DNA of 64,000 nt from Isurus oxyrinchus (Eukaryota): NCBI GenBank assembly GCA_026770705.1, contig JANJGN010000034.1, forward strand, positions 13,144,001 through 13,208,000. The letters are read 5' to 3'. The notes beneath the pieces are model-generated. The model did not search any database, was not told the DNA's origin, and saw only the letters and a program-made list of their open reading frames with translations. Positions 1 to 54,615 of the stretch are shown one piece after another (the stretch's first letter is position 1; each line of letters starts with the position of its first letter). The translations under genes and the position numbers were made by a program.

Positions 1-417
1 CACAGCCCCAGGGTACACCGTCCCACTTCCTAGAAGGTTGGAACTTAAAGTAAAAAGGGACATTCCTCAAAAAGCTCAAAAGGCAAATGGTCATTATCAC
101 TACTGCCGCTGTTTTCTTGGTGCAAAATCTGGATTTCAGATTGTGACAGCAAATGGCCACAAAACGGTCGAAGATGAGAGTGATGGTCAGCCAAACGGAA
201 CAGTCTATAGCAGCGTAACCCAGCATGGCGTTAGCGCTGCACACTGCCATGTAGAACAGGAATGAGAATGGGAAATAGCTGAAACTAAGTGTAGTGAGTA
301 TGACATTGAAGATAATGACCATTAGATCGGCTGTCGCCATGGAGACCAGGTAGAGAGAAACACCTTTGCTGAGGCCGCACTTTCCCCGAGACAGATTCAC
401 AATCGTCACTAAATTAG
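1..417 (-). CDS. GPR139/GPR142-like class A GPCR copy 1, exon 2 (partial; runs off the window start)
   Basis: Acceptor aaccttccag| at 418-419, phase 1. Open frame ANLVTIVNLSRGKCGLSKGVSLYLVSMATADL...VCS...FDRFVAICC...WDGVPWGC with no stop to base 1. TM2 Asp and a DRF motif are intact. Confidence 0.85.
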
Positions 418-3400
418 CTGGAAGGTTAATTGAGAAGCTGTTGAATATTGAGAAGGGTGATGAGCCATCATTACCACAGTGTGACCCAATGAAAGAATAA
501 TCATCGGGTAAAATAATCACAGTGACGTCACGTAGAGAGACACATTTAAACACCAGTTCTCTAATGGTTTGAAAAGTACAATTTAAAGTCTCATGAATTG
601 TTCATGAGAAGGCATGAAACATGTAGTGATTCAAACAAGATACTCTACAGCACTAGTTGGTATTAATAGCTCTGGGAAATAGGTTTTTTTAAAAACAGAT
701 TTGAATCTCTAAAGTGCACTTTATAGCCAATGAAATATGTTTTGAAGCGTAGTCACCATTGCTATGCATGAAACCCACAGCCCATCCTATGCACTGCAAG
801 ATCCCACAAACCGCCATGCAATGCTGACCAGCCAATCTGGTATTGGGATGTTGATGAAGGGATAAGTATTGGCCAGGACCCCGGGGATAAATGATGCCAT
901 GGAGAACCTTTTATATCCAGGAAAGCAAGCAGATGGAGCTTCGGTTTGACATCTCACTCCCAAAACACAGCACCTCAGACAGTGCAGCACACCACCAATA
1001 CTGCATTGGTGTATCAGCTCTGATATTTGTGGCTCACGTGCTGTACGAGAAGGTATGGTGCACTGTAATGAAGGGCCGGAGATAGCACATTACATGTTGA
1101 GGGATCGAGAATAGACAGCGGGTGAAATGTCCTTTCAAAGGACGTTTTGAGGTGTTGGAGTTCACACCCCGAGTTATTGGTTCACACAACAACTATTCCA
1201 ACATCCCACATTCGACTGCGTAGGTAGATGAAAGCAAATAAACCTAATGTATAGGATAAAGCAGCCCTCTTGATTGGCACCCCATCCACAAACATTCACT
1301 CCCTCCACCACTGACATACAGTGTCAGTAGTGTGTGTACCATCTACAAGATGCACTGCAGGAACTCACCAAGGCTCCTTCAACAGCACCTTCCAAACCCA
1401 CGACCACTACCATCTAGAAGGACAAGGGCAGCAGATACATGGGAACACCATCACCTGGAAGTTCCCCTCCAAGCCACTCACCATCCTGACTTGGAAATGT
1501 ATCAGCCGTTCCTTCACTGTCGCTGGGTCAAAACCCAGGAACCCCTTCCCTAACAGCACTGTGGGTATACCTACACTGAATGGACTGCAATGGTTCAAGA
1601 AGGCAGCTCACCACCACCTTCTCAATGGGCAACTAGGTATATGGGCAATAAATGCTGGCCCAGCCAGCGAAGCCGCCACCCTGTGAACAAATGTAAGTAA
1701 AACATAGTGGAACATTATGGGTAAATGTGATTAAGTTCAGGAAAAGCACTAACCTGGCCTGGCCATAATTAACAGGTAAGCAAATGTATTGCATAGCGGT
1801 CTCTAACTTCCTGATGTTTATCCTCTCGATGCCATAGAAATTTAAATGGCAACTGAGTGTCTGTTTCCGACACTGATCTGCATATGGTTGAGTGGAGAGG
1901 CTAAACGCATTAATTAACTGGGTTGCTGCTCTTTCCCCTAGAAAATGGAAGGCTGAGAAATGAACTGACCTTCATGAATATGTGACCATTGAATGGAGTG
2001 GACATGCCAAACTGGAGCCCTTTGGAAGTGGTAAGATCATCATGAACAAATCCAATAGGACATTCACGGGAGGCTCCCTTATTTAGCAAGCGGTTGGAAT
2101 ATGGAACCCCCGGCCACAAGAGGTATTTGAGATAAATAAAAGAGTTTAAGGGTAAACTAGGTAAGTTCACGGGCGAGCAAGGAGTACCAAGTTATTTTGG
2201 GAGGATTAGGGGTAGGAGACTCATGTGGAAATTCATCCCATGTGCCCTGTACCTCTGCTGAATATTCCATAGAATTATAATTAATTTCACTTAAAAAAAT
2301 CACATCAATTCAATTCAATTTCATTATACATATGGAGATTCGTTTCATTTTGGGTACTTTACTCATGGGCTAAAATAAAATTACATCTAAATGAATAATA
2401 ACAATTAAAAAAAAAGAATTAACCTATCAGAGATCTAAATTTAATTAACTATGCATCAATACGTGTTTAATTCATTCAAATAATCAGTCAGTGAGTCCCA
2501 GCCTAAGTACATATCCTCATCCATATATCAAACTCCTATTCACAGTTTTAAGGGCACTAATGAGTTCAGGAACGGACTTGCCTGCGTCGGAGGGATTGTA
2601 GCTCTGACCCTGAATGCATCCATTCAAAGTTAAAGTGCTCTACGGTTAAAATTCATCGAAAGCAGATTTCGCCAGGAGAGGTCTGTTGGTCAAATCTCTT
2701 TCTTGCCTGCTTCAAGAATCCTCAGCACTCTCAAGGGGCCTGCTGCTCTAAGACAACGGTACCAGTCGTGGCATCTATCAAGGACAGCGCCCTCAACCAC
2801 AGCCACATGGAAGAGTTTCCTGACTGTAGGATCACCTTCCAAATCCACGACATCTACCATCTAGAAGGTCGAGGGCTGCAGACACATGGGGAACAGCACC
2901 ACCTGGAAGTCCCCCTCCAAGCCACTCACCATCCTGACTTGGAAATATATCAGCCGTTCCTTCACTGTGGCTGGGTCAAAATCCTGGAACCCCCTCCCTA
3001 ACAGCACTGTGGGTGTACCTACACCACATGGACTGCAGCGGCTCAAGAAGGCAGCTCACCAACCACCTTCTCAAGGGGCAACTAGGAATGGGCAATAAAT
3101 GCTGGGCCCAGCCAGCGAAGCCCACGTCTCGTGAATGAATTTTAAGAAGTCGAGAAGTTTTTGATTTCTGGAGACTAATGTACATCGCTTGCCTACCACG
3201 CCTGAGCACTCTTCCCTCTCGTTCAACTGGCCAGCCTACTTTAACACCGAGATATCTGGAGCCGGCAACTACTTCAATTTCCAAACCATGAATCTTCGCA
3301 GGAGCCGTATCATTAACTGTCTTTTTTTTTTGCCGAACTAGTACTTTCACTTTGTTTTTGCTCCGTTTTGAAAGAATGGTTCCTGCGTCATTTTACGAAC

Positions 3401-4184
3401 TCATTCACCCGAGCCCCTGGTTCCCGAGGAGACCCACCAGCATTAGGGACGTCTCAGCAGCATGTATGTGTCCGGAGTCATTCGGAGAGAGGGTGAAAAT
3501 GAAAAGAGACATCACCGGGGGAGGGAGTGGGGGGGGGGGGGTGGGGGGCGCGGTGGTCGCTGACATGGGCTCCAAGTGATACCCGGTGTGCAAACTGCGA
3601 CTGGTCCAGAGGGATCGAACAGGCGGTTTCACACAATCCGTCAGAAGTCCCTTTAAGGCTGTGGGCCGGGAGAGCCAACTGTTCATCCGTCTGCTCCAGC
3701 CACGGGCCGGACTTCCGAGCAGTCAGGGCGATTATCCAACTCAGTCCAACATTGCAGAATGGCTGCGGCGCCGAAGGAGGGCCATTCGGCCCGTCGTGCC
3801 TGCGCCGGACCTCCAAAGGAGCACTTCACCGAACGCCTGCTTCCCCGCTTTCTGCCCGCAAGCCCTGCACACACGCTTTCCCGGTTGACGCTGCCTCCGT
3901 CACACTCTCACCTTCCGGACCCGGGCTACTCCTTGCATGAGGGTGAGGGGGGTGGGTTGGTGCGGGGGATTTGCCCCCACCCCCTCCCCCCTCCCTCCTC
4001 CTCCTCTTCCTCCCTTTACCGCCATTGGTTCTCGTGCCAATTGCCCTAAATCCAAGAATATCTTCCAGCCTGCAGATTCACCGCTCTAGCTTGACAAGGC
4101 TTCTCACCACGAAGCACGGAGCTCTCAGTAAAAGCGGATCCACCCCATCAGAAAAACGGTTTCCCTCTCTCACCTCCACCCCTC

Positions 4185-4215
<31 letters not shown>

Positions 4216-4964
4216 ACACACACCCACACACACACCCACACACACACACACTTGTACACTCGTCCCGCGTGGTTTGGACTCGCTAGGGTGACGAGCTCAT
4301 TGTCGAATAATAGGATAATCGAGTACAGGAGGATCCCATTGGACTCTTTGAAAGAGCTTTCCAGTTAGTCCCACTACCCGCCCCCAACCACCCCACCCCA
4401 CCCCCCCAACCCATTCCAACCCCAGCCTTTCCAATGATCCGCCTATTGATCCAAAACCCTTTTGAAAATTACTGTCTGTGATCTCCATCCCAGGCGGTCA
4501 ATTCAAATAATAATTAGACTCGGAAGTTTAGGAGGCAGTCTCCTTTCGCCTTTGGTCTCGGCTTAAGAACTGTGTAAGATCTCGTACCCCAGGCTATCAA
4601 AGCTCCTGGACATAGTGCTTCCCCCAAAACCCCGATTAGCGCGATCAAGCCCCTTCATAACTGTGAGCATTCCTATGATACCTCTCCCAGCCCCACCCCC
4701 CCCCCCCCCACCCCCACCTCCGACAACCCCCCTCTCCCCCCAACTCTTCCTCTGCTCTATGGAGAATGCACAACCTCTATCATCTCTCCACACAACTGAA
4801 GCTTCTCATCCCCTGGTGCCACTTCAGCCAATCTCTCCTCTGCACCCTCCCCCGGAACCATCGCATCGACGCCCGGATCGCAAAGCCAGCGATCGAATGT
4901 TTCACTCTCAAGGCAGACCGGACCATTCACATCACATCTGAGGAAGTGGGAAGGGCATCCTCAC

Positions 4965-5034
4965 CCGGAATACAGACGGCTGCAAGGAAGTGGAAGGCAA
5001 CGATTAAAATCTGAATAGTTATTGGCCCTTGCAT
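4965..5034 (-). CDS. GPR139/GPR142-like GPCR copy 1, exon 1
   Basis: ATG at 5034, MQGPITIQILIVAFHFLAAVCIP, donor G|gtgagg (phase 1). Joins exon 2 to complete TM1 (...CIP-A-NLVTIV). A paralogous exon lies at 35816-35885. Confidence 0.85.
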
Positions 5035-5041
5035 TGTTAGT

Positions 5042-5226
5042 CAAAAACAGAATTACCTGGAAAAACTCAGCAGGTCTGGCAGCATCGGCGGAGAAGAAAA
5101 GAGTTGACGTTTCGAGTCCTCATGACCCTTCGACAGAACTTGATGCTGCCAGACCTGCTGAGTTTTTCCAGGTAATTCTGTTTTTGTTTTGGATTTCCAG
5201 CATCCGCAGTTTTCTTTGTTTTTATT
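5042..5226. mobile_element. Short Penelope-derived fold-back insertion with 14-bp TSD
   Basis: Perfect 45-bp inverted repeat of the Penelope pLTR end (5042-5086 / 5142-5186). TSD cttgcattgttagt at 5028-5041 and 5227-5240. The paralog shows the empty site at ~35880. Confidence 0.9.
5102..5140 (-). ncRNA. Minimal Penelope-type hammerhead-ribozyme-like motif (A6U core variant)
   Basis: AGUU-CUGUCGA-A-GGGUC-AUGAG-GACUC-GAA-ACGU-C-AACU: 4-bp stem I, 5-bp stem II, GAAA, palindromic ACGU stem III and a GUC site. Confidence 0.55.
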
Positions 5227-5321
5227 CTTGCATTGTTAGTGTTGGCCGATCTCACTCACCGACTCTGCAGGCAGGGCTTGGCAGTCTGGGTTCAGATCCC
5301 GAGTTGAAAACGGTGCATCAC

Positions 5322-5328
5322 TTATATA
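5322..5328 (-). promoter_or_regulatory. Putative TATA box of GPCR copy 1
   Basis: Minus strand TATATAA(G), about 90 nt upstream of the pre-insertion ATG position. The paralog has TGTATAAG at the equivalent place (~35973-35980). Confidence 0.5.
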
Positions 5329-6353
5329 GGGTTGTAAACCCCCTCTGCGACACAACCGGGGTTCAGTTCCAGTATAGTGAACATAGTGAACACACTTATT
5401 AAGAGCGTCCCTCAGCGCTGACATATTCCACATGGGAATGGGGCTATTTGTGACCAGCGCTCCTCAGGGGGCTTTCACCAGCAATGAAGTGCGTTTGTTT
5501 CTCAGTCAGGTTCTTGCAGAACAGGCGCTGATTCACTTCGGGGCAACAACCTGGGCGGAATGTTACTTCCCGTGCCGGTCACCCTCTGCGTTACTGTCGA
5601 TGAGAGAGAAGGATTAATGGACAGAATTATGTGCAGCTCTGCCGCCCTCTACCGCCGAGGGAGCGGGTTCCCGACCAAACCCTAAGCGTCAAGCCAAGGG
5701 AAGCATTAATGTTACGGCCCAGTGGTTGAAAGCTACCATTTGAGATACAAGCGACTCCTGGCATCACATTAACCTGAAGGCACCGCCCCCCTCACTTTAG
5801 AAGGGGTCCCTCTGCAGCAGGTAAAAATGCGTGGCTGGGTCGGAAAATGAGTCGATATTTACAAGTGAACACTTGGAATCTCCCCCTGGAGTAGCAGGGC
5901 CTGCCCGCTGCCTAGAGGTCAGTTCACGGTCCTGCCGTTGCAAGACTGGGTTGGATAGGTTTCTGATGGGTGGGATTGTCAAGGCGTATTGGACCCAAGC
6001 TGGGTGATTGAGGGGAAGGTCAGCCATGATCTGACTGAATGGCAGAATCGGTTGAAGGGGCTGAATGGCCTCCTGATTTTTTTTTAAAGCTTACCTTCCC
6101 ATACGCGCGAAGGAAAGTTGGGAAGAACTCTGCATCTCAGAGAGAGAGAGAGAGAGAGAGCAATTAAGGTATTTTCTAAATGGCAAGAAAAACAGAGCTA
6201 ACGTTTCGAATCCGTACCACTCTTCTTATCTATGTACTCCTGCTCCTATTTCTTATGTTCTTATAAATAGGGGCTGAGGCCTGAGGCAGATCAGCCATGG
6301 TCTTATTGAATGGTGCCGAATGGCCTACCCCTGCTCCTGTTTCTTGAGTTCTT

Positions 6354-8079: not shown

Positions 8080-9197
8080 CTTTTTTTTTGGAAAAATATA
8101 CTTTATTCATAAAATATCTGAAAGAACATTACAAAACATTTCCAAATTGCCATCACAATAAGTGCAATCATATTCCAACTTTCCACATAGATCATGAGAT
8201 GCTTCAATACAATCAGTGAACATACAGACATTTCAACTTGGTCATTACAGTCAGTCCAACAGTACAATGGGATTCAAGTTATGGACAGAGATCATGTTGC
8301 TTTCTGAGGTGCTTCAATACAATTGTGATACATTTAGTATTCACTATATACATTAGTTCTGAGTCATACAGCCCGAGGGGTCTTTACAGTTTCCAGCCCC
8401 TCGGTGCACTATGGCTGAAAGGTCTCGGACAGTGACCTTTCCCCATTGCGCCTTTGTGGCGGCTGCCCCAAGCTTTAGTGTGTCCCTCAGAACATAGACC
8501 TGGACCTTGGAATGTGCTAGTCTGCAACACTTGGTCAGGGACAACTCTTTGTGCTGGAAGACCAACAAGTTTCGGCCAGACCAGAGAGCATCTTTCACCG
8601 AGTTGATGATCCTCCAGCTGCAGTTGATGTCTGTCTTGGTGTGTGTCCCTGGGAACAGCCCGTAGAGCACAGAGTCCTGTGTCACAGAACTGCTCGGGAT
8701 GAACCTCCACAGAAACCACTGCATCTCTCTCCAGACCTTCTTTGCAAAGGCACAATCCATAAGGAGGTGAACAACGGTCTCGTCCCCACCACAGCCACCT
8801 CGAGGGCAATGTGCAGAGGGGGTGAGACTCCTGGCGTGTAGGAAGGATCTTACAGGGAGGGCCTTTCTCACCACCAGCCAAGCTACATCTTGGTGCCTGT
8901 TGGAAAGTTCTGGCGATGAGGCATTCTGCCAAATGACTTTGACAGTCTGCTCGGGGAACCATCCCATAGGATCCACCCTCTCCTTTTCCCTCAGGGCCCC
9001 TAAGATGTTACGTGCAGACCACTGCCTGATGGACTTGTGGTCAAAGGTGTTTCTCTGCATAAATTTCTCCACGAGGGATAGGGTGGTACAGCACGGTCCA
9101 ACTACTTGGAGCGTTCCGTGGCAGCGTGGCCAGACCCATCCTTCACTACACCAGGGACAGGTAGAACCTCAGCACGCAGTGACACTTGGTGTTTGCT
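8080..9197 (-). mobile_element. Tx1/L1-clade LINE, 3' part (ORF2 C-terminal zinc finger, 3' UTR, poly-A)
   Basis: ORF 8353-9072 contains CPRGGCGGDETVVHLLMDCAFAKKVW (zf-RVT-like). On the minus strand there is AATAAA and a poly-A tail at ~8080-8106. Confidence 0.85.
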
Positions 9198-30832: not shown

Positions 30833-32739
30833 GGCATTTTATCCAGAATGGGGCTCAATACGTCACTGCCTCAGAGATAAAGGTGACTTTAGCTTTCCAC
30901 TGTGGTATATAACAGGCGGTTATCAGACACATAATCAGAGTGCACAGACCAAAGTTTCTTATGCCTTATCTTCCATTTTACACCAGAGTTTCAAGTTAAA
31001 ACAACTTCCAAAGCTGGTGAATTCCCAATTTGGCCAGGTATGGAACAGATGGTTTCTCCTTTATCTTTCACATTCGAGCAGGTCTGGACAAAGTGGGAGT
31101 AAACACTCGTGACATCGAGTAAAGAGAGACGTGGCCAGGGATTGGCGCCTCTTTCACATTTTAAACACAATTTAGCCCTGGCTACTTCTACAAATCTGTA
31201 GTCAAGAGGGAAAGGGGAACTTTCACTTTTGCCAGTAGGCCCAGAAGAGATGTTAATGAATTGGCCAGGGAAAGGAACAAAGCAGTTAAAATGGGTTCCA
31301 GAATAGGCGCACACATATTACTGACTGGTGGTTCGAGTGAAAATTCCTGTGGCCTCAACTCATCATTTGGTAACACTGTGGACAATCGGGTGCCGTGGGA
31401 GGCGGGGGTAGGGGGGTGGGGGTGGAGTGGGGGAGGGTGGGAGGACGGGGGGGGGGGGGGGGGGGGGCGGGGGGCAACAGAGTTATATGAACGGTCCGGG
31501 GAGCTGTATTTCCAGCCAGGGTTGTTACTTTCATGAGGATGCTAATTCAATGACGAGAGTAAAAGAATATTTCACCAACCTCTTCAGCTCCTCTCTGACC
31601 TTACTCTGGGTCAGTGCATAAATGACAATCTTTGTACAGGAGCTCAGGTAGAAGAGAATATTTCCAGATATATCTGCAACCGTTACTGGGTGATCGTAGC
31701 TAGGGTAAGAATGCCTGTTGGAGATCTCCACCAGTGAGAAAACACAGATCTTGGTCATCCACAGCAAGATAAAACTGCCCGATACAGCAAACAGCAGAAT
31801 GATGGATCTCCGCCTGTTGGCCATCTCGGCATCTCCTCGCTGCTCCCCCTTACTGGGACCCTGGAGGCCCCTGCGGGCTCGATTGGCCAGCACAATGTGC
31901 CTGACGGTCAGAGCATTGAGCAGCAGGATCAGGATGTAGGGGATCAATGGGTTCAGCAGGTGGTGGAGCCAGAAAAATGCCACCCAACTGGGCAAGGTGT
32001 AGAATTCCAGTCTGGTGGCACAGCCCCAGGGTACACCGTCCCATGTGCCATAAGGTCAGAACTTAAAGTAAAAAGGGACATTCCTCAAAAAGCTCACAAG
32101 GCAAACGGTCATTATTACCACCACCGCTGTTTTCTTTGTGCAAAAACTGGATTTCAGATTGTGACAGCAAATGGCCACAAAACGGTTGAAGATGAAAGCA
32201 ATGGTCAACCAAACGGAACAGTCTGTAGCAGCGTAAGCCAGCATGGCATTAGCACTGCATACCACCGTGTAGAACAGGAATGAGGCTGGGAGATTGTTGA
32301 AAAGGAGTGAGGTGAGTATGACCCTGAAGAAACTGATCAGTAGATTGGCTGCCGCCATGGAGACCAGGTAGAGAGAAACACCTTTGCCGAGGCCACACTT
32401 TCCCTGAGACACAATCATCACTAAATTAGCTGGAAGATAAATTGAGAAGATGTTGAACATTAAGAAGAGCCATCCTTACCACATGTTACCCAATGAAAAA
32501 CTAGTAATCGAGTAAAATAACTGCAATGAGCTTCTATTAACGTCGCATATATTACACACATTTAAAGGTCATTTGTGCGATGGTTTGAAAACACAAGGTC
32601 ATTCACTGTTGATGGGAAGACACAAGGAATATAGAAATTCCGGCAAGAAACTCTACCGGAGTGATGGGTATCAATAGTGCTGTGTAGAAAAAGTTTTAAA
32701 AAAAAGACTTGATTTTCTAATGTGGGTTTGGTGATCACT

Positions 32740-34135: not shown

Positions 34136-36679
34136 TAACATGATCTGGCCATGAACAACAGCTAAGCAAATCTACATCATAACACTCTCTACATTACTGA
34201 TATTTTCCTGAATGCCTTAGAAATTATATTGAGAAAATGAATACACGCCTCTGACAATATTATGTCATGTGGCCGGCCGGAAGTGTTAAACTCAGTAACT
34301 AACTGGGTGATGGCTCTTCTCTCTGCATATTGAAAGGCCTGCATCTAAACTGATAGGGGTCTTTATGAATATGTAACATTTGGAAAGAGTAGGTGTGCCA
34401 AGCCTGAGCCCGCCAGTGGAGGAGGTAACAACCAGGGGCCTTACTCTTCTGACAACCCCAATTCGGAAATTCAAGATATACCTCCATGTCCAGGAAGTGG
34501 TCAAAATGTGGAACTTCCTGCCACAAGGGTTAATTGAGATGAATGGAAGAGTTTAAGGGTAAACTCGATAATTACATGGGCCAGCCAAGGACTACCAGTT
34601 GGTGCTGGTAGGGTTGGATGAACGAGGGCCGAGGAGACTCATGGGGAGCGCAAGTATCAGCCGGTGGACCCCGGGTGCCCTGTTTCTGTGCTGCACATTG
34701 GAAATAATTCTAACTCCATCCACCAAAAGAAAAAGTTATCCATATCCAATTAAATCCAGAGTCACGGATTCGTCACAACTCAGGCATAGGCCATTCAGCC
34801 TGTCCTTTCTGTACTGGCTCTCTGACTGAGCCAAATGAATGCCACTCTCCCACCTTCTCACCGTAACCCTGCACATCCCTCATTTTCACACAATAATCCA
34901 GTTCCCTCTTGAATGCTCTGAGTCAAACTGAGCACACTCTGGGGCAGTGTATTCCACATCCTAGCCTGCTGCCGCATGGACAGGATTTTTCACAGGTCTC
35001 CATTGCTGCTTTTGCCAATTCCCTGAAGTGTAACAATATTTACTGGCCTGTAGGTTGGCCCTCTTAGCCTTACAAGATTTTCACCAGAGCCTGCAGGGCT
35101 GTTAATAAAAGTAGACTCAAATCTAAACCTGTTCCTCCCACTCATTCATTTCCAGACAAACTAAACGTCCCACGTTTATTGGGCTTCATAGAATGACAAA
35201 CCCATTTTAGAATCATTGAATTGAGCACAGGAGGATCCCATTTGATTTGAAAATGCTCCCACACCACCCCCCTCCCCCCACCTCCCCTCACGCCCTGACC
35301 TTTCCTCATAGTCCTGTGGATTGTCTTTTCCAATTCTTTTCTAAAATTTACTCACTGTAATCCCCTCCCAGCGCCCGCTCGCTTACTGGCTTACTGAATT
35401 CAAATGTTATAAGTTCACTGCTTAGAAAGACATCTCGTTTCTCCTCTGGTCCTCTTAAGGGCTGTGTGAAATCTCTCTCATCCGACCGCCAAATATCCTG
35501 CCACTGATAAATGCATTTTTTTTATTCCCGCCATTAGCACTACCAACACTCTTCATAAGTTCAAAAGCCTTCACTAAATTCCTCCAGTCCTCCACGGTTC
35601 CAAGGAGGATACATAACGTGTTTAATCTCTCCACAGAACTGAACGTTCCCATCCCTGGTACAATTCCAGTCGATCTCCTCTGCATCTTCCCCAGGGTCAC
35701 TCTATGAAATACGTCATCGACATCCAGGTTACAATGTCACTGTTTATATGTTTTACTATGAAATAGAGACAGAACTACAAACATAACATCTGAGGAGGTG
35801 GAAGACTGTCCTCTCCTGGAATAGAGACCAATGCAAGGAAATGGAAGAAAAAGAACAAGATTTGTAGTATTATTGGCCCTTGCATTGTTAATGATGGCCG
35901 GTCTCACTCACTGACTCTGCAGACAGGACTTGGGAGTCCGGGTTCAGATCCCGAGTTGAAAACAGTGCATCACTTATACAGGATTGTAAACCCCTCTGTG
36001 ACACAACCCGCGTTAGTTCCAGTATATTGAACACATTTATTAAGAGTGTCCCTATGACATGGTGCATTCTCTCAGCACTGACATGGGAATGGAACTATTT
36101 GTGACCAGCGCTCCCCAAGGGGCTTTCACCAACAATGAAGTGTTTTTGTTTTACAATCAGGCTCTTGCAGCATTGGTGCTGATTCCACTTCGTGTCAATA
36201 ACTTGGTTCGAATTTCACTTCTCATGTCAGTCACTGACTATGTTATTGTCAATGAAGTGATTAATGGACAGTATTGTGTGTGCACCTTTTAGGCTGCCGT
36301 CCTTTACTTCCTCGAGTGTGCTTTCCCGACTAAATCCTAAGTATTAAGTCAAGGGAAATTTTACTTGTTGCATTCCTGATGTTCAAAGCTACCGTTTGAG
36401 ATGCAAGCAGGTCGCTTCACTAAATAACTGTGGGAATAGGGTCCCCACCACTCCAGAAGAGGTCCCTACTGCAGCAGATGAAATCCGGGGCTAGGTCGGA
36501 AAATGTTTTGATATTTTGCACCAAATAGCTTCAATCTACCCTTGAAGAAGCAGACTTGCATCACTTCACCCGTTCGATCTTTTCAAAACTGGGATGGGCA
36601 GATTTTGGCTGGCTAAGGTTGACAAGGTGAATGGGGCCGAGCAGTGTTACTCTACTCCAGTTGTCACATCCTGCCAATC

Positions 36680-39124: not shown

Positions 39125-39350
39125 GATAAAAGCAAAATACTGCAGATGCTGGAAACCTGAAACAAAAACAGAAAATGCTGGAAAAGCTCAGCAGATCTAA
39201 CAGCGCCTGTGGAGAGAAAGACAGTTAATGTTTCGAACCCATGTGACCCTTCAGCTCTGAAGAAGAGTCATACAGACTCGAAACATTAACTCTGTCTTTC
39301 TCTCCACAGATGCTGTTAGGCCTGCTGAGATTTCCCACTATTTTCTGTTT
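39125..39350. mobile_element. Older Penelope-derived fold-back (palindromic) element
   Basis: Two inverted, diverged copies of the pLTR end (ctcagcagatctaacagc... / ...gctgttaggcctgctgag), inserted in a CR1 remnant. Confidence 0.75.
39257..39292 (+). ncRNA. Hammerhead-like motif with canonical CUGAAGA core in an older Penelope-derived hairpin
   Basis: CUGAAGA-A-GAGUC-AUACA-GACUC-GAAAC-AUUAACUC. The stem III palindrome carries one substitution (acat instead of acgt). Confidence 0.5.
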
Positions 39351-42976: not shown

Positions 42977-45048
42977 TTACTTTACTGAGGGGAATGATAC
43001 AATGATAAGAGTAAAATGATATTTCACCGCCCTCTTCAGCTCCTCTCTGACCTTACTTTGGGTCAGTGCATCAACGGCAGTGTTTGTACAGGAGCTCAGG
43101 TAGAAGAGAATATTCCCAGATATATTGGCGACCATTACTGGGTGATCGTAACTAGGGTAAGAATGCCTGTTGGAGATCTCCATCAGTAAGAAAACATTAG
43201 ATCTTGGTCAAAAACAGAATTACCTGGAAAAACTCAGCAGGTCTGGCAGCATCGGCGGAGAAGAAAAGAGTTGACGTTTCGAGTCCTCATGACCCTTCGA
43301 CAGAGCTAGGTGAATCCCAGGGAGGGTTGAAATATAAGCTGGTTTAAGGTGGAGGCGGGGGGGGGGGGGGGGGGGGCGTGGGGGGGGTGTGCCGGTTGGG
43401 TGCGGGGAGACAAGTGGAGGGGGGGTGGTGTGGTTGTAGGCAAAAGCAGTGAATGGAAGCAGATCATCAAAAGATGTCACAGACGGCAGAACAAAAGAAC
43501 ACATAGGTGTCGAAGTTGCTGATATTATCTAAGCGAATGTGCTAATTAAGAATGGATGGTAGGGCACTAAAGGTACAGCTCTAGTGGGGGTGGAGGGGAG
43601 CATAAAAGATTTAAAAATATTTAAAAATAATGGAAATATTAGTTGTCAGAAGACCTACCCTGAATTACATCATCTGAATGTGTTACTTTATTAATTATTT
43701 ATTTACATTAACCAGGAAAAAGCCTTATTTAGTTGACATAGTTATAATTAACACTGAGTAACCACTCCCAAATAATTAAACAAGGTAAAAAAACTAATCG
43801 AAATGCCAGAATACACAAGTTCATTTAACCATTATGTACCAATTGTCCACCTTACCCGCCCACCGGGGATCAGGCGTTAGGCCTCCCACCCTGGAGATAT
43901 ACAATATTTCCATTATTTTAAAATATTTTTAAATCGTTTATGCTCCTCCCACCCCCACTAGAGCTATACCTTGAGTGCCCTGCCATCCATTCTTAATTAG
44001 CACATTCGTTTAGATAATGTCACCAACTTTAACACCTCTGTGTTCTTTTGTACCATTGTCGCTGACATCTTTTGATGATCTGCTTCTATCGCTGCTTGTT
44101 TGTCCCTACAACCACACCACCCCCCTCCACTTCTCTCCCCCCCCCGCCCCCCCCCCCCCCCCCCACCACCACCTTAAACCAGCTTATATTTCAACCCTCC
44201 CTGGGATTCACCTAGTTCTGTTGAAGGGTCATGAGGACTCGAAACGTCAACTCTTTTCTTCTCCGCCGATGCTGCCAGACCTGCTGAGTTTTTCCAGGTA
44301 ATTCTGTTTTTGTTTTGGATTTCCAGCATCCGCAGTTTTTTGTTTTTATTTTTATCATTAGATCTTGGTCATCCGCAGCAAGATAAAACTGCCCGATACA
44401 GCAAACAGCAGAATGATGGACCTCCGCCTGTTGGCCACCTCGGTATCTCCTCGCAGCTCCCCCTTACTGGGACCCCGGAGGCCCCTGCGGGCTCGATTGG
44501 CCAGCACAATGTGCCTGACGGTCAGAGCATTGAGCAGCAGGATCAGGATGTAGGGGATCAATGGGTTCAGCAGGTGGTGGAACCAGAAAAATGCCACCCA
44601 ACCGGGCAAGGTGTAGAATTCCAGTCTGGTGGCACAATCCCAGGGTACACCGTCCCACTTCCTGGAAGGTTGGAACTTAAAGTAAAAAGGGACATTCCTC
44701 AAAAAGCTCACAAGGCAAATGGTCGTTATCACACCGCCGCTGTTTTCTTGGTGCAAAAACTGGATTTCAGATTGTGACAGCAAATGGCCACAAAACAGTC
44801 AAAGGTGAGATCGATGGTCAACCAAACGGAACAGTCTATAGCAGCGTAACCCAGCAGGGCGTTAGCGCTGCACACTGCCGTGTAGAACAGGAATGAGAAT
44901 GGGAGATAGTTGCAGCAGAGTGAGGTGAGTATAACGCTGAAAAGAGCAACCAGTAGAGCCGCCAATGCCATGGAGACCAGGTGGAGAGAAACACCTTTGC
45001 CGAGGCCGCACTTTCCCCGAGACAGCATCACGATCGTCACTGAATTAG
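42977..45048 (-). pseudogene. GPR139-like GPCR copy 4 pseudogene (exon 2 only)
   Basis: Acceptor at 45049-45050, ANSVTIVMLSRGKCGLGKG... There is a frameshift near 44730 and a 1-nt insertion giving TAA after ...MTKI. The exon is split by a Penelope insertion (43211-44355). The C-terminal part SSCTNTAV...VREELK ends at 42977. Exon 1 is deleted. Confidence 0.9.
43211..44355. mobile_element. Penelope-derived composite insertion: two inverted ~430-450-bp pLTR arms around a ~260-bp unrelated core
   Basis: Arms at ~43209-43640 and ~43903-44355. TSD cattagatcttggtca at 43195-43210 and 44356-44371, inside GPCR copy 4. Confidence 0.88.
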
Positions 45049-46605
45049 CTGCAAGATAAACTGAGAAGCTGTTGAATATTGAGCAGACTGACGAGTCATC
45101 GTTACCACAGTGCGACCCAATGAAAGAACAGAATAGAATTCATCGGCTAAGATAGTCACAGTGAGCTTCTATTAATATCAAGTATGAAGACACACATTTA
45201 AAGAGCAGTAAAATCCCCCTTCTTTGCAGTATCATAACTTTAAGCATCTCTATTAAGTCACCGGTCCTCACTTCTTTGGAGAGAACACCACTTGTCTAAT
45301 CTCTCCACACAACTGAAGCCTCTTATCCCTGGTACCATCCCAGCCAATCGCCTCTGCACCGTCCCCACGGTCTCCCTATGAAACATTCCATCGACATCCA
45401 GGGTGACAATGTCAGTGATCGAATGTTTTACTATGAAATACGGGCAGAACTATAAGCATCAACCCCCTGCGACACAACCGGGGTTCAGTTCCAGTATAGT
45501 GAACATAGTGAACACACTTATTAAGAGCGTCCCTCAGCGCTGACATATTCCACATGGGAATGGGGCTATTTGTGACCAGCGCTCCTCAGGGGGCTTTCAC
45601 CAGCAATGAAGTGCGTTTGTTTCTCAGTCAGGTTCTTGCAGAACAGGCGCTGATTCACTTCGGGGCAACAACCTGGGCGGAATGTTACTTCCCGTGCCGG
45701 TCACCCTCTGCGTTACTGTCGATGAGAGAGAAGGATTAATGGACAGAATTATGTGCAGCTCTGCCGCCCTCTACCGCCGAGGGAGCGGGTTCCCGACCAA
45801 ACCCTAAGCGTCAAGCCAAGGGAAGCATTAATGTTACGGCCCAGTGGTTGAAAGATACCATTTGAGATACAAGCGACTCCTGGCATCACATTAACCTGAA
45901 GGCACCGCCCCCCTCACTTTAGAAGGGGTCCCTCTGCAGCAGGTAAAAATGCGTGGCTGGGTCGGAAAATGAGTCGATACCTTGCACCGAATACCTGAAT
46001 CATCCCTCTGAGAAAGCAGACTGCTTTCTGCGTCGGTGTCAGTTCCGTCTGGCTTTCCCAAGGCTTTGGGGGTGGGCGAATAGGCTTATGATGGGTCAAG
46101 GATGTCAAGGCGTAATGGGGCCAAACTGGGCGAATGGGGACGAGAAGCAGGTCAGCCATGCTCTGACGGAATGGCAGGACAGGGCTCAAGGGGCTGAATG
46201 GCCTCCGCTCTCTTTATCGGAATGGCAGAAACCGCTGGACATATTCGGCAGGTCTGGACGCCCCTGTTTGGGAGAGATAAACAGAGTTGACGTTCCAGGC
46301 GATGAACTGTCATCAGTCCGGAACTCCGTTCAGCTCCATTGACCAGGGAACTTAGCGGCTGTGGTGTCGACATAGCTGCCCTTAGGCAGCCAAGGCCCGC
46401 AGGAGGAGGTCGGTTTGAAGAGCAAGGAGCAGGACACGCGTTCTCATAGAGCGGCCAGTCACCTGCGGAACACAGGGAGTCAGAGATTGATTTTGCCATC
46501 AGGAGAGAGATTAGAAAGGACCTGAGGGGGGAATAAAAACTTCCCAAAGGCATCAACAAAGGCTTGATGAATTTCAGCTTCCCCCACAACAACACAAGAG
46601 GCAGG

Positions 46606-51914: not shown

Positions 51915-54615
51915 ATAATAAAAGCAAAGAAGTGCGGATGCTGGAAATCCAAAACAAAAACAAAAGTACCTGGAAAAACTCAGCAGGTCTGGCAGCATCG
52001 GTGGAGAGAAACACAGTTAACGTTTCGAGTCCTCATGACCCTTCAACAGAGCTAAGTAAAAATAGAAAAGGAGTGAAATATAAGCTGGTTTAAAGTGGTG
52101 GGGGGGGGGGGAGGTTGGAGTTGGGACAAGAAGAGCTGGATAGAGGGCCAGTGATAGGTGGAGATAATCAAAAGACGTCACAGACAAAAGGACAAAGATG
52201 TGTTGAAGGTGATGTTATTATCTAAAGGAATGTGCTAATTAAGGGCAGAAAGCAGGTCAAGCAAGGTACAGATAGCCCTAGTGGGAGTGGGGTGGGGTGG
52301 GGTGAAGGAATCGAAAAAGGCTAAAAGGTAGAGATAAAACAATGGATGGAAATACATTAAAAAATAATGGAAATAGGTGGGAAAAGAAAAATCTATATAA
52401 ATTATTGGAAAAAACAAAAAGGAGGGGGAAAAGCAGAAAGCGGGTGAGGAAGTAGTTGAGAGTTCATGATCTAAAGTTGTTGAACTCAATATTCAGTCCA
52501 GAAGGCTGTAAAGTGCCTAGTTGGAAGATGAGGTGCTGTTCCTCCAATTTGCGTTGAGCTTCACTGGAACAATGCAGCAGGCCAAGGACGGACATGTGGG
52601 CAAGAGAGCAGGGTGGAGTGTTGAAATGGCAAGCGACAGGGAGGTCTGGGTCATGCTTGTGGACAGACCGAAGGTGTTCTGCAAAGCGGTCACCCAGTCT
52701 GCGTTTGGTCTCTCTAATGTACAGGAAACTGCATTGGGAGCAACAAATGCAGTAGACTAAGTTGAGGGAAATGCAAGTGAAATACTGCTTCACTTGAAAG
52801 GAGTGAAAGGAGTAAAGGAGCCTTTAGACGGTGAGGAGAGGGGAAGTGGAGGGGCAGGTGTTGCATCTTCTGCGGTTGCATGAGAAGGTGCTGTGGGAGG
52901 GGGTTGAGGAGTAGGGGGTGATGGAGAAGTGGACCAGGGTGTCCCGGAGGGAACGAGTCCTGCGGAGAAAGCGTTGTGGGTGGGGGCCGGAGTAGGACTG
53001 GAACAAGGAATGTTCCACAAATGCCATGAAGAGACAGGCATAGCTGGTGCCCATGCGGGTACCGTCCCACAACTCTCTCCGGTACATCGATGATTACTTC
53101 GGTGCTGCTTCATGCTCTCGTCGGGACCTGGAAAAATTTATTAATTTTGCTTCCAATTTCCACCCCTCCATCATTTTCACATGGTCCATCTCTGACACTT
53201 CCCTTCCCTTCCTTGACCTCTCTGTCTGAATTTCTGGTGATAGACTGTCCACCAATATCCATTACAAGCCTACCGACTCCCACAGCTGCCTTGACTACAG
53301 CCCCTCACACCCTGCTTCCTGTAAGGACTCCATCCCATTCTCTCAGTTCCTTCACCTTCGTCGCATCTGTTTTGATTATGCCACTTTCAAAAACTGGCAT
53401 GTCCTCCTTCTTCCTTAACCGAGGTTTTCCACCCACGGTGGTTGACAGGGCCCTCAACTGTGTCCAGCCCATCTCCCGCGCATCCGCCCTCACACCTTCT
53501 CCCTCTCAGAAACACGATAGGGTCCCCCTTGTCCTCACTTATCACCCCACCTGCCTTCGCATTCAAAGGATCATCCTCCGCTATTTCCGCCAACTCCAGC
53601 ATGATGCCACCACCAAATACATCCCCCCGGCGGCATTCCGAAGGGATCGTTCCCTCTGTGACACCCTGGTCCACTCCTCCCATCACCCCCTATTCCTCAA
53701 CTCCTCCCACGGCACCTTCCCATGCAACCGCAGAAGATGCAACACCTGCCCCTTCACTTCCCCTCTCCTCACCATCCAAGGGCCCAAACATTCCTTTCAA
53801 GTGAAGCAGCATTTCACTTGCACTTCCCTCAACTTAGTCTACTGCATTCGTTGCTCCCAATGTGGTTTCCTCTACATTGGAGAGACCAAACGCAGACTGG
53901 GCGACCACTTTGCAGAACACCTTCGGTCTGTCCGCAAGCATGACCCAGACCTCCCTGTCGCTTGCCATTTCAACACTCCACACTGCTCTCATGCCCACAT
54001 GTCTGTCCTTGGCTTGCTGCATTGTTCCAGTGAAGCCCAATGCAAACTGGAGGAACAGCACCTCATCTTCCAACTAGACACTTTACAGCCTTCCGGACTG
54101 AATATTGAGTTCAACAATTTTAGATCATGAACTCTCTCCTCCATCCCCACCCCCTTTCCGTTTTTTTCCCCTCTTTTTTATTTTTTCCAATAATTTATAT
54201 AGATTTTTCTTTTCCTACCTATTTCCATTATTTTTAAATGTATTTCCATCCATTATTTTATCTCTACCTTTTAGCCTTTTTCGATTCCTTCACCCCACCC
54301 CACCCCCACTCGAGCTATCTGTACCTTGCTTGTCCTGCTTTCTACCCTTAATTAGCACTTCCTTTAGATAATATCACCACATTCAACACCTCTTTGTCCT
54401 TTTGTCTGTGACATCTTTTGGTTATCTCCACCTATCACTGGCTTATTGTCCCAACACCCCGCTCCCCCCCTTAAACCAGCTTATATTTCACCCCTTTCCT
54501 ATTTTTACTTAGTTCTGTTGAAGGGTCATGAGGACTCGAAACGTTAACTGTGCTCTCCTCCGCCGATGCTGCCAGACCTGCTGAGTTCTTCCAGGTATTT
54601 TTGATTTTGTTTTTT
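51915..54615. mobile_element. Penelope-like element with inverted arms (RT + GIY-YIG remnants)
   Basis: Plus arm (~53067-54615) has RT LRYIDD...FASNFHPSIIFT...LPFLDL and GIY-YIG VYCIRCSQCGFLYIGETKRRLG. Minus arm (~51915-53066) has GTRMGTSYACLF joined to a second GIY-YIG copy and a pLTR. Stops and frameshifts are present. Confidence 0.92.

What the first reader, a model, noticed from the sequence alone, without database searches (positions are those of the whole stretch)
5028..5240. Penelope insertion duplicated a GPCR start codon and put a uORF, a 45-bp hairpin and a sense-strand hammerhead motif into its 5' UTR
Seen: the 14-bp TSD contains the ATG. The original start (5233) now reads ATG CAA GAA TAA (MQE*), while the duplicate ATG (5034) heads the intact exon 1. 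Between them is a perfect 45-bp inverted repeat ending 7 nt before the coding ATG. Its loop carries a minimal hammerhead-like motif oriented on the mRNA strand. The putative TATA box (5322-5328) is upstream, so all of this would be transcribed. The paralog at ~35880 shows the empty site. Established: Penelope pLTRs carry minimal type I hammerheads that act as dimers, and uORFs and stable hairpins repress scanning. Inference: the only ORF-intact GPCR copy here may be silenced or regulated post-transcriptionally by the insertion.
Basis: partly seen in the sequence, partly recalled or inferred. Interest (0 to 1): 0.78.

Follow-up and report, generated by a model that had tools for sequence, protein, structure and literature searches.

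The report
Penelope mini-insertion at shark GPCR start
A recent 185-base fragment of a very abundant jumping gene landed exactly on the start codon of a shark receptor gene and probably blocks its translation, while the small "ribozyme" motif it carries looks like an inactive passenger.

Summary
There is a 14-bp target-site duplication holding the ATG, a 3-codon uORF, a perfect 45-bp inverted repeat ending 7 nt before the working ATG, a hammerhead-like motif on the mRNA strand, an upstream TATA box and an empty site in the paralog.

The insert (5042-5226) has the standard Penelope-like-element (PLE) insertion architecture in miniature. It joins the last 85 nt of the element, including the 40-nt "tail", to an inverted, tail-less 100-nt copy.

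A contig of a related shark species (about 4% diverged) skips exactly 5031-5229. The insertion is therefore recent and lineage-specific.

Homology to annotated shark "GPR139-like" receptors confirms the two-exon gene model and the ATG at 5034 as the conserved start.

The insert adds four upstream ATGs and a predicted -92 kcal/mol hairpin. If it is transcribed, translation should be strongly impaired.

The hammerhead motif matches the PLE minimal type but has U instead of the conserved A6. That holds in 6 of 6 young copies here, and the scan noted it before on other DNA of this genome. The motif is present once and folds weakly, so self-cleavage is unlikely.

I obtained no RNA data. Expression, polymorphism and the rest of exon 2 remain unknown. 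This is an ordinary, well-documented transposon hit in a gene family that gains and loses copies quickly.

The parts
5227..5240 (.). Upstream (relative to the gene) copy of the 14-bp target-site duplication. It holds the original ATG (5233-5231, minus strand).
   Evidence: family D2, 100%
5028..5041 (.). Downstream copy of the 14-bp target-site duplication. It holds the working ATG (5034-5032, minus strand).
5042..5226 (.). The whole 185-bp PLE-derived insert.
   Evidence: It is absent from the related species: X6 record 14 skips 5031-5229.
5142..5226 (+). Direct part: the last 85 nt of the PLE in plus orientation, ending with the 40-nt tail (5187-5226) that abuts the TSD.
   Evidence: Alignment with copies c13, c44 and c52; BLAST, 97.5% to 44268-44345.
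5042..5141 (-). Inverted part: 100 nt of the same PLE 3' region in minus orientation (hammerhead-like motif through the arm). It is tail-less and ends at the TSD.
   Evidence: Identical over 100 nt to copy c13; 99% to copy c44.
5042..5186 (-). Hairpin in the mRNA sense: 45-bp perfect stem (5186-5142 paired with 5086-5042) and a 55-nt loop (5141-5087). Predicted -91.8 kcal/mol.
5102..5140 (-). 39-nt PLE-type minimal hammerhead-like motif. Helix I is 4 bp. The core box has U at position 6 (5133). There is an extra A (5129). Helix II is 5 bp (5128-5124 with 5118-5114). The GAAA box and a palindromic ACGU follow. The would-be cleavage site is after C5106.
   Evidence: Features compared with PMC4209133.
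5222..5233 (-). uORF1, MQE-stop. Its context from -7 to +7 is identical to that of the main ATG.
5120..5203 (-). uORF2, 27 codons, entirely inside the insert.
5067..5123 (-). uORF3, 18 codons. It starts in the loop of hammerhead helix II.
5053..5085 (-). uORF4, 10 codons, in the 3' arm of the hairpin.
5322..5328 (-). TATATAA, the presumed TATA box. It lies in a block from the TATA box to the ATG that is about 90% identical to paralog G2, against 74.5% for the whole upstream region.
4965..5034 (-). Coding part of exon 1: 23 codons plus 1 nt (phase 1). The donor GT is at 4964-4963.
   Evidence: The exon 1 peptide aligns to residues 1-23 of P0001.
1..417 (-). Exon 2 (7TM exon), open to the window edge. 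The acceptor AG is at 419-418.
   Evidence: Pfam 7tm_1, E=1e-12. It aligns from residue 25 of P0001, 73% identical.
35879..35892 (.). Empty target site in paralog G2.

Best explanation
A recent insertion of a very abundant Penelope-like element (PLE), specific to this shark lineage, hit the start codon of a GPR139-like class A receptor gene (G1).

How the insert formed (inferred from the anatomy and from published in vitro data):
- The element's endonuclease cut the two target strands 14 bp apart.
- cDNA synthesis was primed on both strands. It started at the element's two alternative internal start sites, one including the 40-nt tail and one not.
- Both cDNAs were short (85 and 100 nt) and overlap by 45 nt.
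- Joined head-to-head, they give a 185-bp insert with a perfect 45-bp inverted repeat, flanked by a 14-bp duplication that contains the ATG.

Predicted consequence for the gene (inferred, not shown):
- If transcription starts about 30 nt below the conserved TATA box, the leader grows from about 65 to about 265 nt.
- It then holds four upstream ATGs. The first has exactly the context of the real one.
- It also holds a -92 kcal/mol hairpin ending 7 nt before the real ATG.
- By the established scanning model this should nearly abolish translation, so the allele is a null or strong hypomorph.

The hammerhead-like motif in the loop is a passenger. It is homologous to PLE minimal hammerheads, but it carries U at position 6, stands alone and folds weakly. 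It is not expected to cleave.
For: Anatomy:
- TSD and inverted repeat.
- The insert parts align base-for-base with other copies. The tail is on one part only.
- The same architecture (inverted pair, tail at one end only) is seen in 3 of 3 pairs in the window. The TSD is 14 bp in 2 of the 3; none was found for the third.
- Published descriptions match. Craig et al. report that an inverted 5'-truncated copy and a 30-40-bp tail at one end are typical (PMC8557442, passages). Frangieh et al. report that a PLE protein cleaves and extends both strands and starts reverse transcription at two internal sites that delimit the tail (PMC11167929, main text).

PLE identity:
- A degenerate RT remnant (YIDD) lies upstream of a GIY-YIG-like ORF, next to a full 3' region.
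- 216 relatives were found at E<=1e-5. Many carry PF00078, PF26215 or PF01541.

Recency:
- Arms differ at 0 of 45 positions and the TSD at 0 of 14.
- The inverted part is 100/100 identical to copy c13.
- Contig X6 record 14 of the related species joins 5030 to 5230 with no extra letters and about 4% divergence in the flanks.

Gene model:
- The exon 1 and exon 2 peptides abut on residues 1-23 and 25 onward of annotated shark proteins.
- 122 family members were found.

Repression potential:
- Leader with insert: -122.2 kcal/mol, z=-12.2. Native part of the leader: -15.6, z=+0.7. Paralog leader: -18.1, z=+0.1.
- Hairpin alone: -91.8 kcal/mol.
- Four upstream ATGs here against none in the paralog leader.

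Hammerhead:
- U6 in 6 of 6 young copies that cover the core. A6 survives only in an old copy.
- Predicted probability of helix I is 0.07-0.15 and of helix II 0.29.
Against: - No RNA evidence of any kind. The one run labelled "RNA?" (X5) covers the intron and the region upstream of the TATA box at low depth, so it behaves like DNA. The transcription start site, splicing and expression of G1 are unknown.
- The 3' part of exon 2 lies outside the window, so G1 may already be dead.
- Across the part of exon 2 in the window, the related species differs at 8 sites, 5 non-synonymous and 3 synonymous. That gives no clear sign of constraint.
- Short uORFs allow reinitiation, and helicases can open hairpins, so some translation could persist.
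- The strengths quoted for hairpin and A6 effects are recalled from the literature (Kozak 1986/1989; Ruffner et al. 1990).
- The empty site in the related species rests on one contig of one run.
Confidence: 0.7

Rival explanations
1. Neutral hit on an already dead gene. G1 was a pseudogene, or was dispensable, before the insertion, so the insert has no functional meaning.
For: Both other paralogs in the window are dead. G2 has an in-frame stop and a lost exon 1 donor. G3 has lost the TATA-to-exon-1 block and carries a PLE in exon 2. The family is very large (122 hits). The non-synonymous to synonymous count against the related species is 5:3.
Against: All 162 codons of G1 visible in the window are open and 73% identical to an annotated receptor, with splice sites intact. 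The block from the TATA box to the ATG is better conserved with G2 (about 90%) than the surrounding upstream region (74.5%).
Confidence: 0.3
2. The insert is a post-transcriptional regulator. In this reading the hammerhead cleaves the mRNA, possibly as a dimer with another transcript, or the uORFs and hairpin give conditional translation.
For: The motif is on the mRNA strand and has the PLE minimal-hammerhead layout. PLE hammerheads can be protein-assisted (PMC11167929).
Against: The core has U6. There is a single copy, with no partner on the same RNA (one search finds one motif in the insert). Single minimal motifs showed no detectable cleavage and dimers only low activity (PMC4209133). No reads began or ended at the hammerhead site in Anolis (PMC11167929). 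The fold is weak. The insertion is too young to have been shaped by selection.
Confidence: 0.04
3. The hairpin is processed into small RNAs or edited. In this reading the 45-bp perfect dsRNA, transcribed from a gene promoter, feeds Dicer- or ADAR-type pathways and yields small RNAs matching the roughly 10^4 copies of the PLE tail.
For: A perfect 45-bp stem. The arms match a family at about 10^4-fold read depth. Several miRNA-precursor models score on it, all below their thresholds.
Against: All Rfam miRNA scores are far below gathering (57 against 100 bits) and are what any long perfect hairpin gives. An old PLE fold-back behaves the same way. No small-RNA data and no evidence of transcription.
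Confidence: 0.05
4. It is not a retroelement insertion. In this reading it is a fold-back DNA transposon (MITE) or an assembly artefact.
For: It has terminal inverted repeats plus a TSD. PLE inverted structures are known to trouble assemblies (PMC8557442).
Against: The termini are asymmetric: a 40-nt tail sits at one end only. Both parts are colinear with the 3' end of an RT/GIY-YIG element. A clean TSD is a biological signature. Four runs of the probable source sample hold 0.77-0.87 of the words of the 601-base stretch 4800-5400, although those runs are not independent of the assembly.
Confidence: 0.02

Closest known systems
Canonical Penelope-like element insertion units (inverted 5'-truncated copy plus direct copy, 30-40-bp tail at one end), as described by Craig et al. 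2021 and Frangieh et al. 2024
   Same: It has an inverted 5'-truncated copy next to a direct copy, a 40-nt tail at one end only and a short TSD. A hammerhead motif lies 64 nt (tail-less end) or 104 nt (tailed end) upstream of the element's 3' end. The family ORF is of the RT plus GIY-YIG type.
   Different: It is extremely short (185 bp, no coding sequence), so the two parts overlap and form a perfect 45-bp hairpin. The TSD was 14 bp in both insertions where it could be read.
Minimal type I hammerhead ribozymes of metazoan PLEs (Cervera and De la Pena 2014)
   Same: Helix I has 4 bp. [quoted passage not shown] The GAAA box is present. There is no helix III, positions 15.2-16.2 are palindromic, and the cleavage triplet is GUC.
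   Different: Position 6 is U instead of the conserved A in all 6 young copies. Helix II has 5 bp including a G-U pair. Only one motif lies on the transcript.
L1 twin priming (5' inversion) in mammals (recalled, not checked in a paper here)
   Same: Two cDNAs primed on opposite target strands are joined head-to-head inside one TSD.
   Different: In this insert the two cDNAs start at different internal template sites 40 nt apart and overlap by 45 nt. L1 inversions usually have a small deletion or duplication at the junction and a poly(A) end.
Translational repression by uORFs and stable 5' leader hairpins (scanning model; recalled)
   Same: An upstream ATG sits in the same context as the main ATG. 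A hairpin much more stable than the roughly -50 kcal/mol reported to stall 40S subunits lies between the cap and the ATG.
   Different: Nothing has been measured here. The arrangement arose by a single transposon hit, not by selection.

Membership tests
Penelope-like element (EN+ PLE) insertion | The family encodes an RT with a C-terminal GIY-YIG endonuclease. | tested here: met
   An RT remnant with YIDD lies upstream of an ORF with a GIY-YIG-like stretch (Pfam E=0.015, below the cut-off). Of 216 relatives at E<=1e-5, many carry PF00078, PF26215 or PF01541. The copy in the window is itself degenerate (frameshift and stops).
Penelope-like element (EN+ PLE) insertion | An inverted 5'-truncated copy adjoins the direct copy. 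| tested here: met
   5042-5141 (minus) against 5142-5226 (plus). The same is seen at 43197-44345 and 51922-54613.
Penelope-like element (EN+ PLE) insertion | A 30-40-bp tail extension at one end only. | tested here: met
   The 40-nt tail at 5187-5226 is absent from the inverted end. One tailed and one tail-less end in 3 of 3 pairs.
Penelope-like element (EN+ PLE) insertion | Target-site duplication. | tested here: met
   A 14-bp TSD here and at the 43197-44345 insertion. None was found for the third pair.
Hammerhead ribozyme, PLE minimal type I | Conserved CUGANGA box. | tested here: not met
   The box has U at position 6 (5133) in the insert and in 6 of 6 young copies. One old copy at 39257 has the canonical box.
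Hammerhead ribozyme, PLE minimal type I | [quoted passage not shown] | tested here: met
   Read directly from 5140-5102. The criteria come from PMC4209133.
Hammerhead ribozyme, PLE minimal type I | A second motif nearby, to form the active dimer. | tested here: not met
   Only one motif lies in the insert. The direct part lacks it.
Hammerhead ribozyme, PLE minimal type I | A match to curated hammerhead covariance models. | tested here: inconclusive
   No hammerhead family matched at E<=10 or at gathering threshold in the whole window. The old copy with the canonical core is missed too, so the models do not see this type.
Hammerhead ribozyme, PLE minimal type I | Self-cleavage. | not testable with these tools
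   This needs an in vitro transcription assay.
uORF/hairpin-repressed 5' leader | The elements lie inside the transcribed leader. | not testable with these tools
   No RNA run was obtained. Run X5 behaves like DNA. The TATA box at 5328-5322 is only a sequence match, though it lies in a block that is conserved with paralog G2.
uORF/hairpin-repressed 5' leader | Upstream ATGs with in-frame stops before the main ATG, and a very stable hairpin. | tested here: met
   Four uORFs. Hairpin of -91.8 kcal/mol. Leader z-score of -12.2.
GPR139-like class A GPCR (shark expansion) | 7tm_1 domain and the family N-terminus. | tested here: met
   Pfam 7tm_1, 48.5 bits against a cut-off of 30.5. 73% identity to P0001. 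Exon 1 matches residues 1-23.
GPR139-like class A GPCR (shark expansion) | Complete open reading frame. | not testable with these tools
Fold-back DNA transposon / MITE | Symmetric terminal inverted repeats reaching both ends. | tested here: not met
   The repeat reaches the left end (5042). On the right it stops 40 nt short of the end (5186 against 5226).

The most novel reading that the evidence does not exclude
The mini-insert could have turned a receptor gene, driven by its own tissue-specific promoter, into a transcribed perfect-hairpin locus. Its 45-bp dsRNA stem would match about 10^4 PLE tails and would be diced into small RNAs against the element. Residual receptor translation would then depend on reinitiation after the MQE uORF and on helicase unwinding. 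That would be an accidental, brand-new link between transposon control and a chemoreceptor-like gene. A weaker variant: the U6 hammerhead still cleaves when it pairs in trans with abundant PLE transcripts or is helped by PLE protein.
Probability: 0.05. Interest if true: 0.6.

Novelty: new member of a known kind. Interest (0 to 1): 0.3.

Why it matters
The case is a clean natural example in two ways.

First, it records how Penelope-like elements integrate. Both target strands were primed, from two template start sites 40 nt apart, and the cuts were staggered by 14 bp. This agrees with recent in vitro work on an Anolis element.

Second, it shows how one very short retroelement fragment can disable a gene without touching its coding sequence. 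It duplicates the start codon into a uORF and places a -92 kcal/mol hairpin next to the real ATG.

The empty site in a related species gives an allele pair that can be used directly in reporter tests.

The U6 core, fixed in a family with about 10^4 copies, adds to the evidence that strong hammerhead cleavage is not needed for PLE spread. The scan had already noted this on other DNA of this genome.

For shark biology it is one more step in the rapid gain and loss of copies in a large orphan receptor family.

Tried and rejected
- Rfam. No hammerhead hit, but an old copy with the canonical core is missed too, so the negative result is uninformative. The sub-threshold miRNA and plastid-hairpin hits are what any perfect hairpin gives, and I rejected them.
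- First acceptor guess. I first considered an exon 2 acceptor near 560-558, which would give a longer N-terminus. I rejected it when the homologs showed that exon 1 must join directly at the acceptor at 419/418.
- Start codon inside exon 2. G2 has an ATG just before TM1. I rejected this for G1, which has ATA there, because the family N-terminus matches exon 1.
- RNA evidence. The single run search returned no confirmed RNA run of the species. X5 ("RNA?") covers the intron and promoter at depth of about 5, so I treated it as DNA.
- Polymorphism. The raw reads of a second individual (X21, X22) were sampled at about 4 in 100, which gave 0-2x depth on unique sequence. No junction-spanning evidence was shown, so polymorphism could not be judged.
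- TSD of the third inverted pair: none found.
- Pfam on the PLE ORF: only a sub-threshold GIY-YIG hit. The homology search resolved this.
- Papers. Two searches (listings only) found nothing on the shark GPR139-like expansion and no published PLE insertion that duplicates a start codon. I did not see any supplementary files. The supplementary figures of PMC4209133 that list hammerhead variants may bear on whether U6 cores have been seen before.
- Spliced model.
Full report
**1. Observation**

The region read on the minus strand and the repeat finder confirm every sequence feature in the finding.
- A 14-bp direct repeat lies at 5028-5041 and 5227-5240, 14/14 identical.
- A perfect 45-nt inverted repeat has arms at 5042-5086 and 5142-5186, separated by 55 nt.
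- In the gene's sense the upstream repeat copy reads ATG CAA GAA TAA (5233-5222).
- The downstream copy supplies the ATG at 5034, which opens exon 1. The 3' arm ends 7 nt before it.
- TATATAA lies at 5328-5322.
- Paralog G2 at 35879-35892 carries a single, uninterrupted target.

The arm and the hammerhead-like stretch recur at 8 and 7 sites in the window, against 0.19 and 0.00 expected from shuffles. The insert therefore belongs to a repeat family.

**2. What the insert is**

Longer copies of the family share one order of features in the element's sense. A C-rich stretch comes first, then the hammerhead-like motif, then the 45-nt "arm". After the arm the copy either ends there or runs on for a further 40 nt, the "tail".

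The insert consists of two pieces of this 3' end.
- 5142-5226 on the plus strand is the last 85 nt including the tail. It abuts the right TSD copy.
- 5042-5141 on the minus strand is 100 nt running from just before the motif to the tail-less end. It abuts the left TSD copy.

The two pieces overlap by 45 nt of element sequence, and that overlap is the perfect inverted repeat. The primary orientation is therefore antisense to the gene. The motif sits on the mRNA strand only because it lies in the inverted piece.

The inverted piece is identical over all 100 nt to copy c13.

The same design (inverted pair, tail at one end only) is seen in 3 of 3 pairs in the window:
- this insert;
- 43197-44345, which interrupts exon 2 of paralog G3 and also has a 14-bp TSD;
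- 51922-54613, for which no TSD was found.

The third pair carries a degenerate ORF with an RT remnant (YIDD) followed by a GIY-YIG-like stretch. That ORF has 216 relatives at E<=1e-5 in sharks, rays, echinoderms and corals. Many of them carry reverse-transcriptase (PF00078), PF26215 or GIY-YIG (PF01541) domains. That domain pair defines the endonuclease-bearing Penelope-like elements.

Published work describes exactly this architecture.
- Craig et al. 2021 report that an inverted 5'-truncated copy often adjoins the unit, and that a 30-40-bp tail is often present at only one end (PMC8557442, passages).
- Frangieh et al. 2024 showed in vitro that a PLE protein cleaves and extends both target strands. 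It starts reverse transcription at two internal sites whose spacing corresponds to the tail (PMC11167929, main text).

The 185-bp insert is thus a minimal product of two-strand priming. That mechanism is inferred here, not shown.

**3. Age**

The arms and the TSD copies carry no differences. I laid four runs on 1-5700.

One contig of a related species (organism B, run X6, record 14, 487 nt) maps with record positions 187-487 on 4730-5030 and 1-186 on 5230-5424. It therefore skips exactly 5031-5229, which is 199 nt: the insert plus one TSD copy. The flanks differ by about 4%. The orthologous site in the related species is empty, so the insertion postdates the split.

This rests on one contig of one run.

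Read depth over the PLE bins is about 10^4-fold that of neighbouring unique bins, in both raw-read runs of a second individual. The family is also very abundant in the related species.

**4. The gene**

The exon 2 translation hits 122 proteins. They are nearly all cartilaginous-fish proteins automatically named "probable G-protein coupled receptor 139", 294-324 aa long, and the best is 73% identical. Pfam 7tm_1 scores 48.5 bits against a cut-off of 30.5.

I searched the spliced model exon by exon and left out the joined step.
- The 23-residue exon 1 peptide aligns to residues 1-23 of P0001 (12/23 identical, E=3e-6).
- The exon 2 peptide aligns from residue 25.
- Residue 24 is the split codon.

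This fixes a phase-1 intron with its donor at 4964/4963 and its acceptor at 419/418. It also shows that the duplicated ATG is the family's conserved initiator. G2's exon 1 matches in the same way.

The other two paralogs in the window are dead.
- G2 has lost the donor and has an in-frame stop.
- G3 has lost the TATA-to-exon-1 block, even though 517 nt upstream are 99.6% identical to G1, and it has a PLE in exon 2.

G1 is open for all 162 codons visible in the window, but the rest of exon 2 lies outside it.

Between G1 and G2 the block from the TATA box to the ATG is about 90% identical, against 74.5% for the whole upstream region. That fits a real core promoter and leader.

**5. Likely effect**

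With a start site about 30 nt below the TATA box (inferred), the leader would contain four upstream ATGs, at 5233, 5203, 5123 and 5085. Each opens a short ORF that ends before the main ATG. The leader of the empty-site paralog has none. The first upstream ATG shares positions -7 to +7 with the real one.

| RNA | Predicted energy (kcal/mol) | z-score |
|---|---|---|
| Hairpin alone | -91.8 | not computed |
| 281-nt leader with insert | -122.2 | -12.2 |
| Native part of the leader | -15.6 | +0.7 |
| Paralog (G2) leader | -18.1 | +0.1 |

By the scanning model (recalled: hairpins beyond about -50 kcal/mol stall 40S subunits), translation from such a leader should be close to nil. The arm also contains a donor-like CAG|GTAATT site 22 nt before the ATG, but that site would be buried in the stem.

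None of this is shown, because no RNA data could be obtained. The run labelled "RNA?" (X5) covers the intron and promoter at low depth and behaves like DNA.

Within exon 2 the related species differs at 8 listed sites, 5 non-synonymous and 3 synonymous. That is too few to show constraint.

**6. The hammerhead motif**

The 39 nt at 5140-5102 have the layout of PLE minimal hammerheads as defined by Cervera and De la Pena (PMC4209133, whole text):
- a 4-bp helix I;
- the core box;
- a G10.1-C11.1 closing pair;
- a 5-bp helix II;
- the GAAA box;
- no helix III, but a palindromic ACGU;
- a GUC cleavage triplet.

The exception is U at position 6 instead of the conserved A. This holds in 6 of 6 young copies from two subfamilies, while position 7, which is free to vary, varies between C and U. 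One old copy at 39257 keeps A6. An earlier follow-up of this scan (s1-869593) reached the same conclusion on other DNA of this genome.

Several points argue against cleavage.
- Only one motif lies on the transcript, whereas the published minimal motifs showed no detectable activity as single units and low activity as dimers.
- In Anolis, cleavage needed the PLE protein, was dispensable for insertion in vitro, and left no trace in RNA-seq.
- The hammerhead-like fold of the loop (-6.6 kcal/mol) is not the minimum (-7.9). Its helices have predicted probabilities of 0.07-0.15 (helix I) and 0.29 (helix II).

Rfam gives no hammerhead match, but it also misses the copy with the canonical core, so that negative result carries no weight. 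I conclude that the motif is a homologous but probably inert passenger.

**7. Verdict**

This is a young, lineage-specific, two-strand-primed mini-insertion of an abundant Penelope-like element, placed exactly on the start codon of a GPR139-like receptor gene.

It most likely creates a translationally dead or crippled allele in a family that gains and loses copies quickly. Alternatively it hit a gene that was already expendable. A regulatory or ribozyme role is unlikely.

It is a new member of a known kind. It is useful as a clean natural record of PLE integration and as a ready-made pair of filled and empty alleles for testing leader effects.

The protein atlas did not take the sequence.

Noticed in passing
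window 43197-44345: A second young PLE inverted-pair insertion (about 1.15 kb) with a 14-bp TSD (CATTAGATCTTGGT) interrupts the 7TM exon of GPCR paralog G3. Its left end is tail-less and its right end carries the tail.
   Followed up: partly
window 45463-45979 vs 5341-5857: 517 nt upstream of G3 are 99.6% identical to the G1 upstream region, although the two exon 2 sequences are only 87% identical. In G3 the identity ends at a deletion that removed the TATA box, leader and exon 1. This suggests recent gene conversion or a mosaic duplication (also noted as s1-865530).
   Followed up: partly
window 51922-54613: A third PLE inverted pair. A 540-nt inverted tailed copy is joined to a 2.1-kb direct copy with a degenerate RT (YIDD) / GIY-YIG ORF (53090-54130, frameshifted upstream). 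It belongs to a subfamily about 86% identical to the insert's. No TSD was found.
   Followed up: partly
window 39203-39313: An old, diverged fold-back PLE copy whose hammerhead-like motif keeps the canonical CUGAAGA box, although its cleavage-site palindrome has decayed. Rfam reports only sub-threshold miRNA-like hits for it.
   Followed up: partly
window ~5252-5261 (minus strand) and the matching G2 site: A donor-like GGTGAGTGAG lies in the native leader about 25 nt upstream of the ATG and is conserved in paralog G2. Whether a leader intron or alternative splicing exists is unknown.
   Followed up: no
window 1141-1710 and 2851-3230: Two intronic repeats have read depth more than 10^3-fold above unique sequence in both shark species (SINE-like). 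At 3028 there are abundant "goes back 52-56" joints, which show that most genomic copies carry an extra 52-56-nt internal duplication relative to this copy.
   Followed up: no
window 8353-9072 (minus strand): An ORF with a zf-RVT domain (Pfam E=4e-10), a fragment of a different (LINE-type) retroelement.
   Followed up: no
window 31531-32500 and 35817-35885: Paralog G2 is a pseudogene. It has an in-frame stop after FYFKF in exon 2, and the exon 1 donor has changed from GT to GA.
   Followed up: partly
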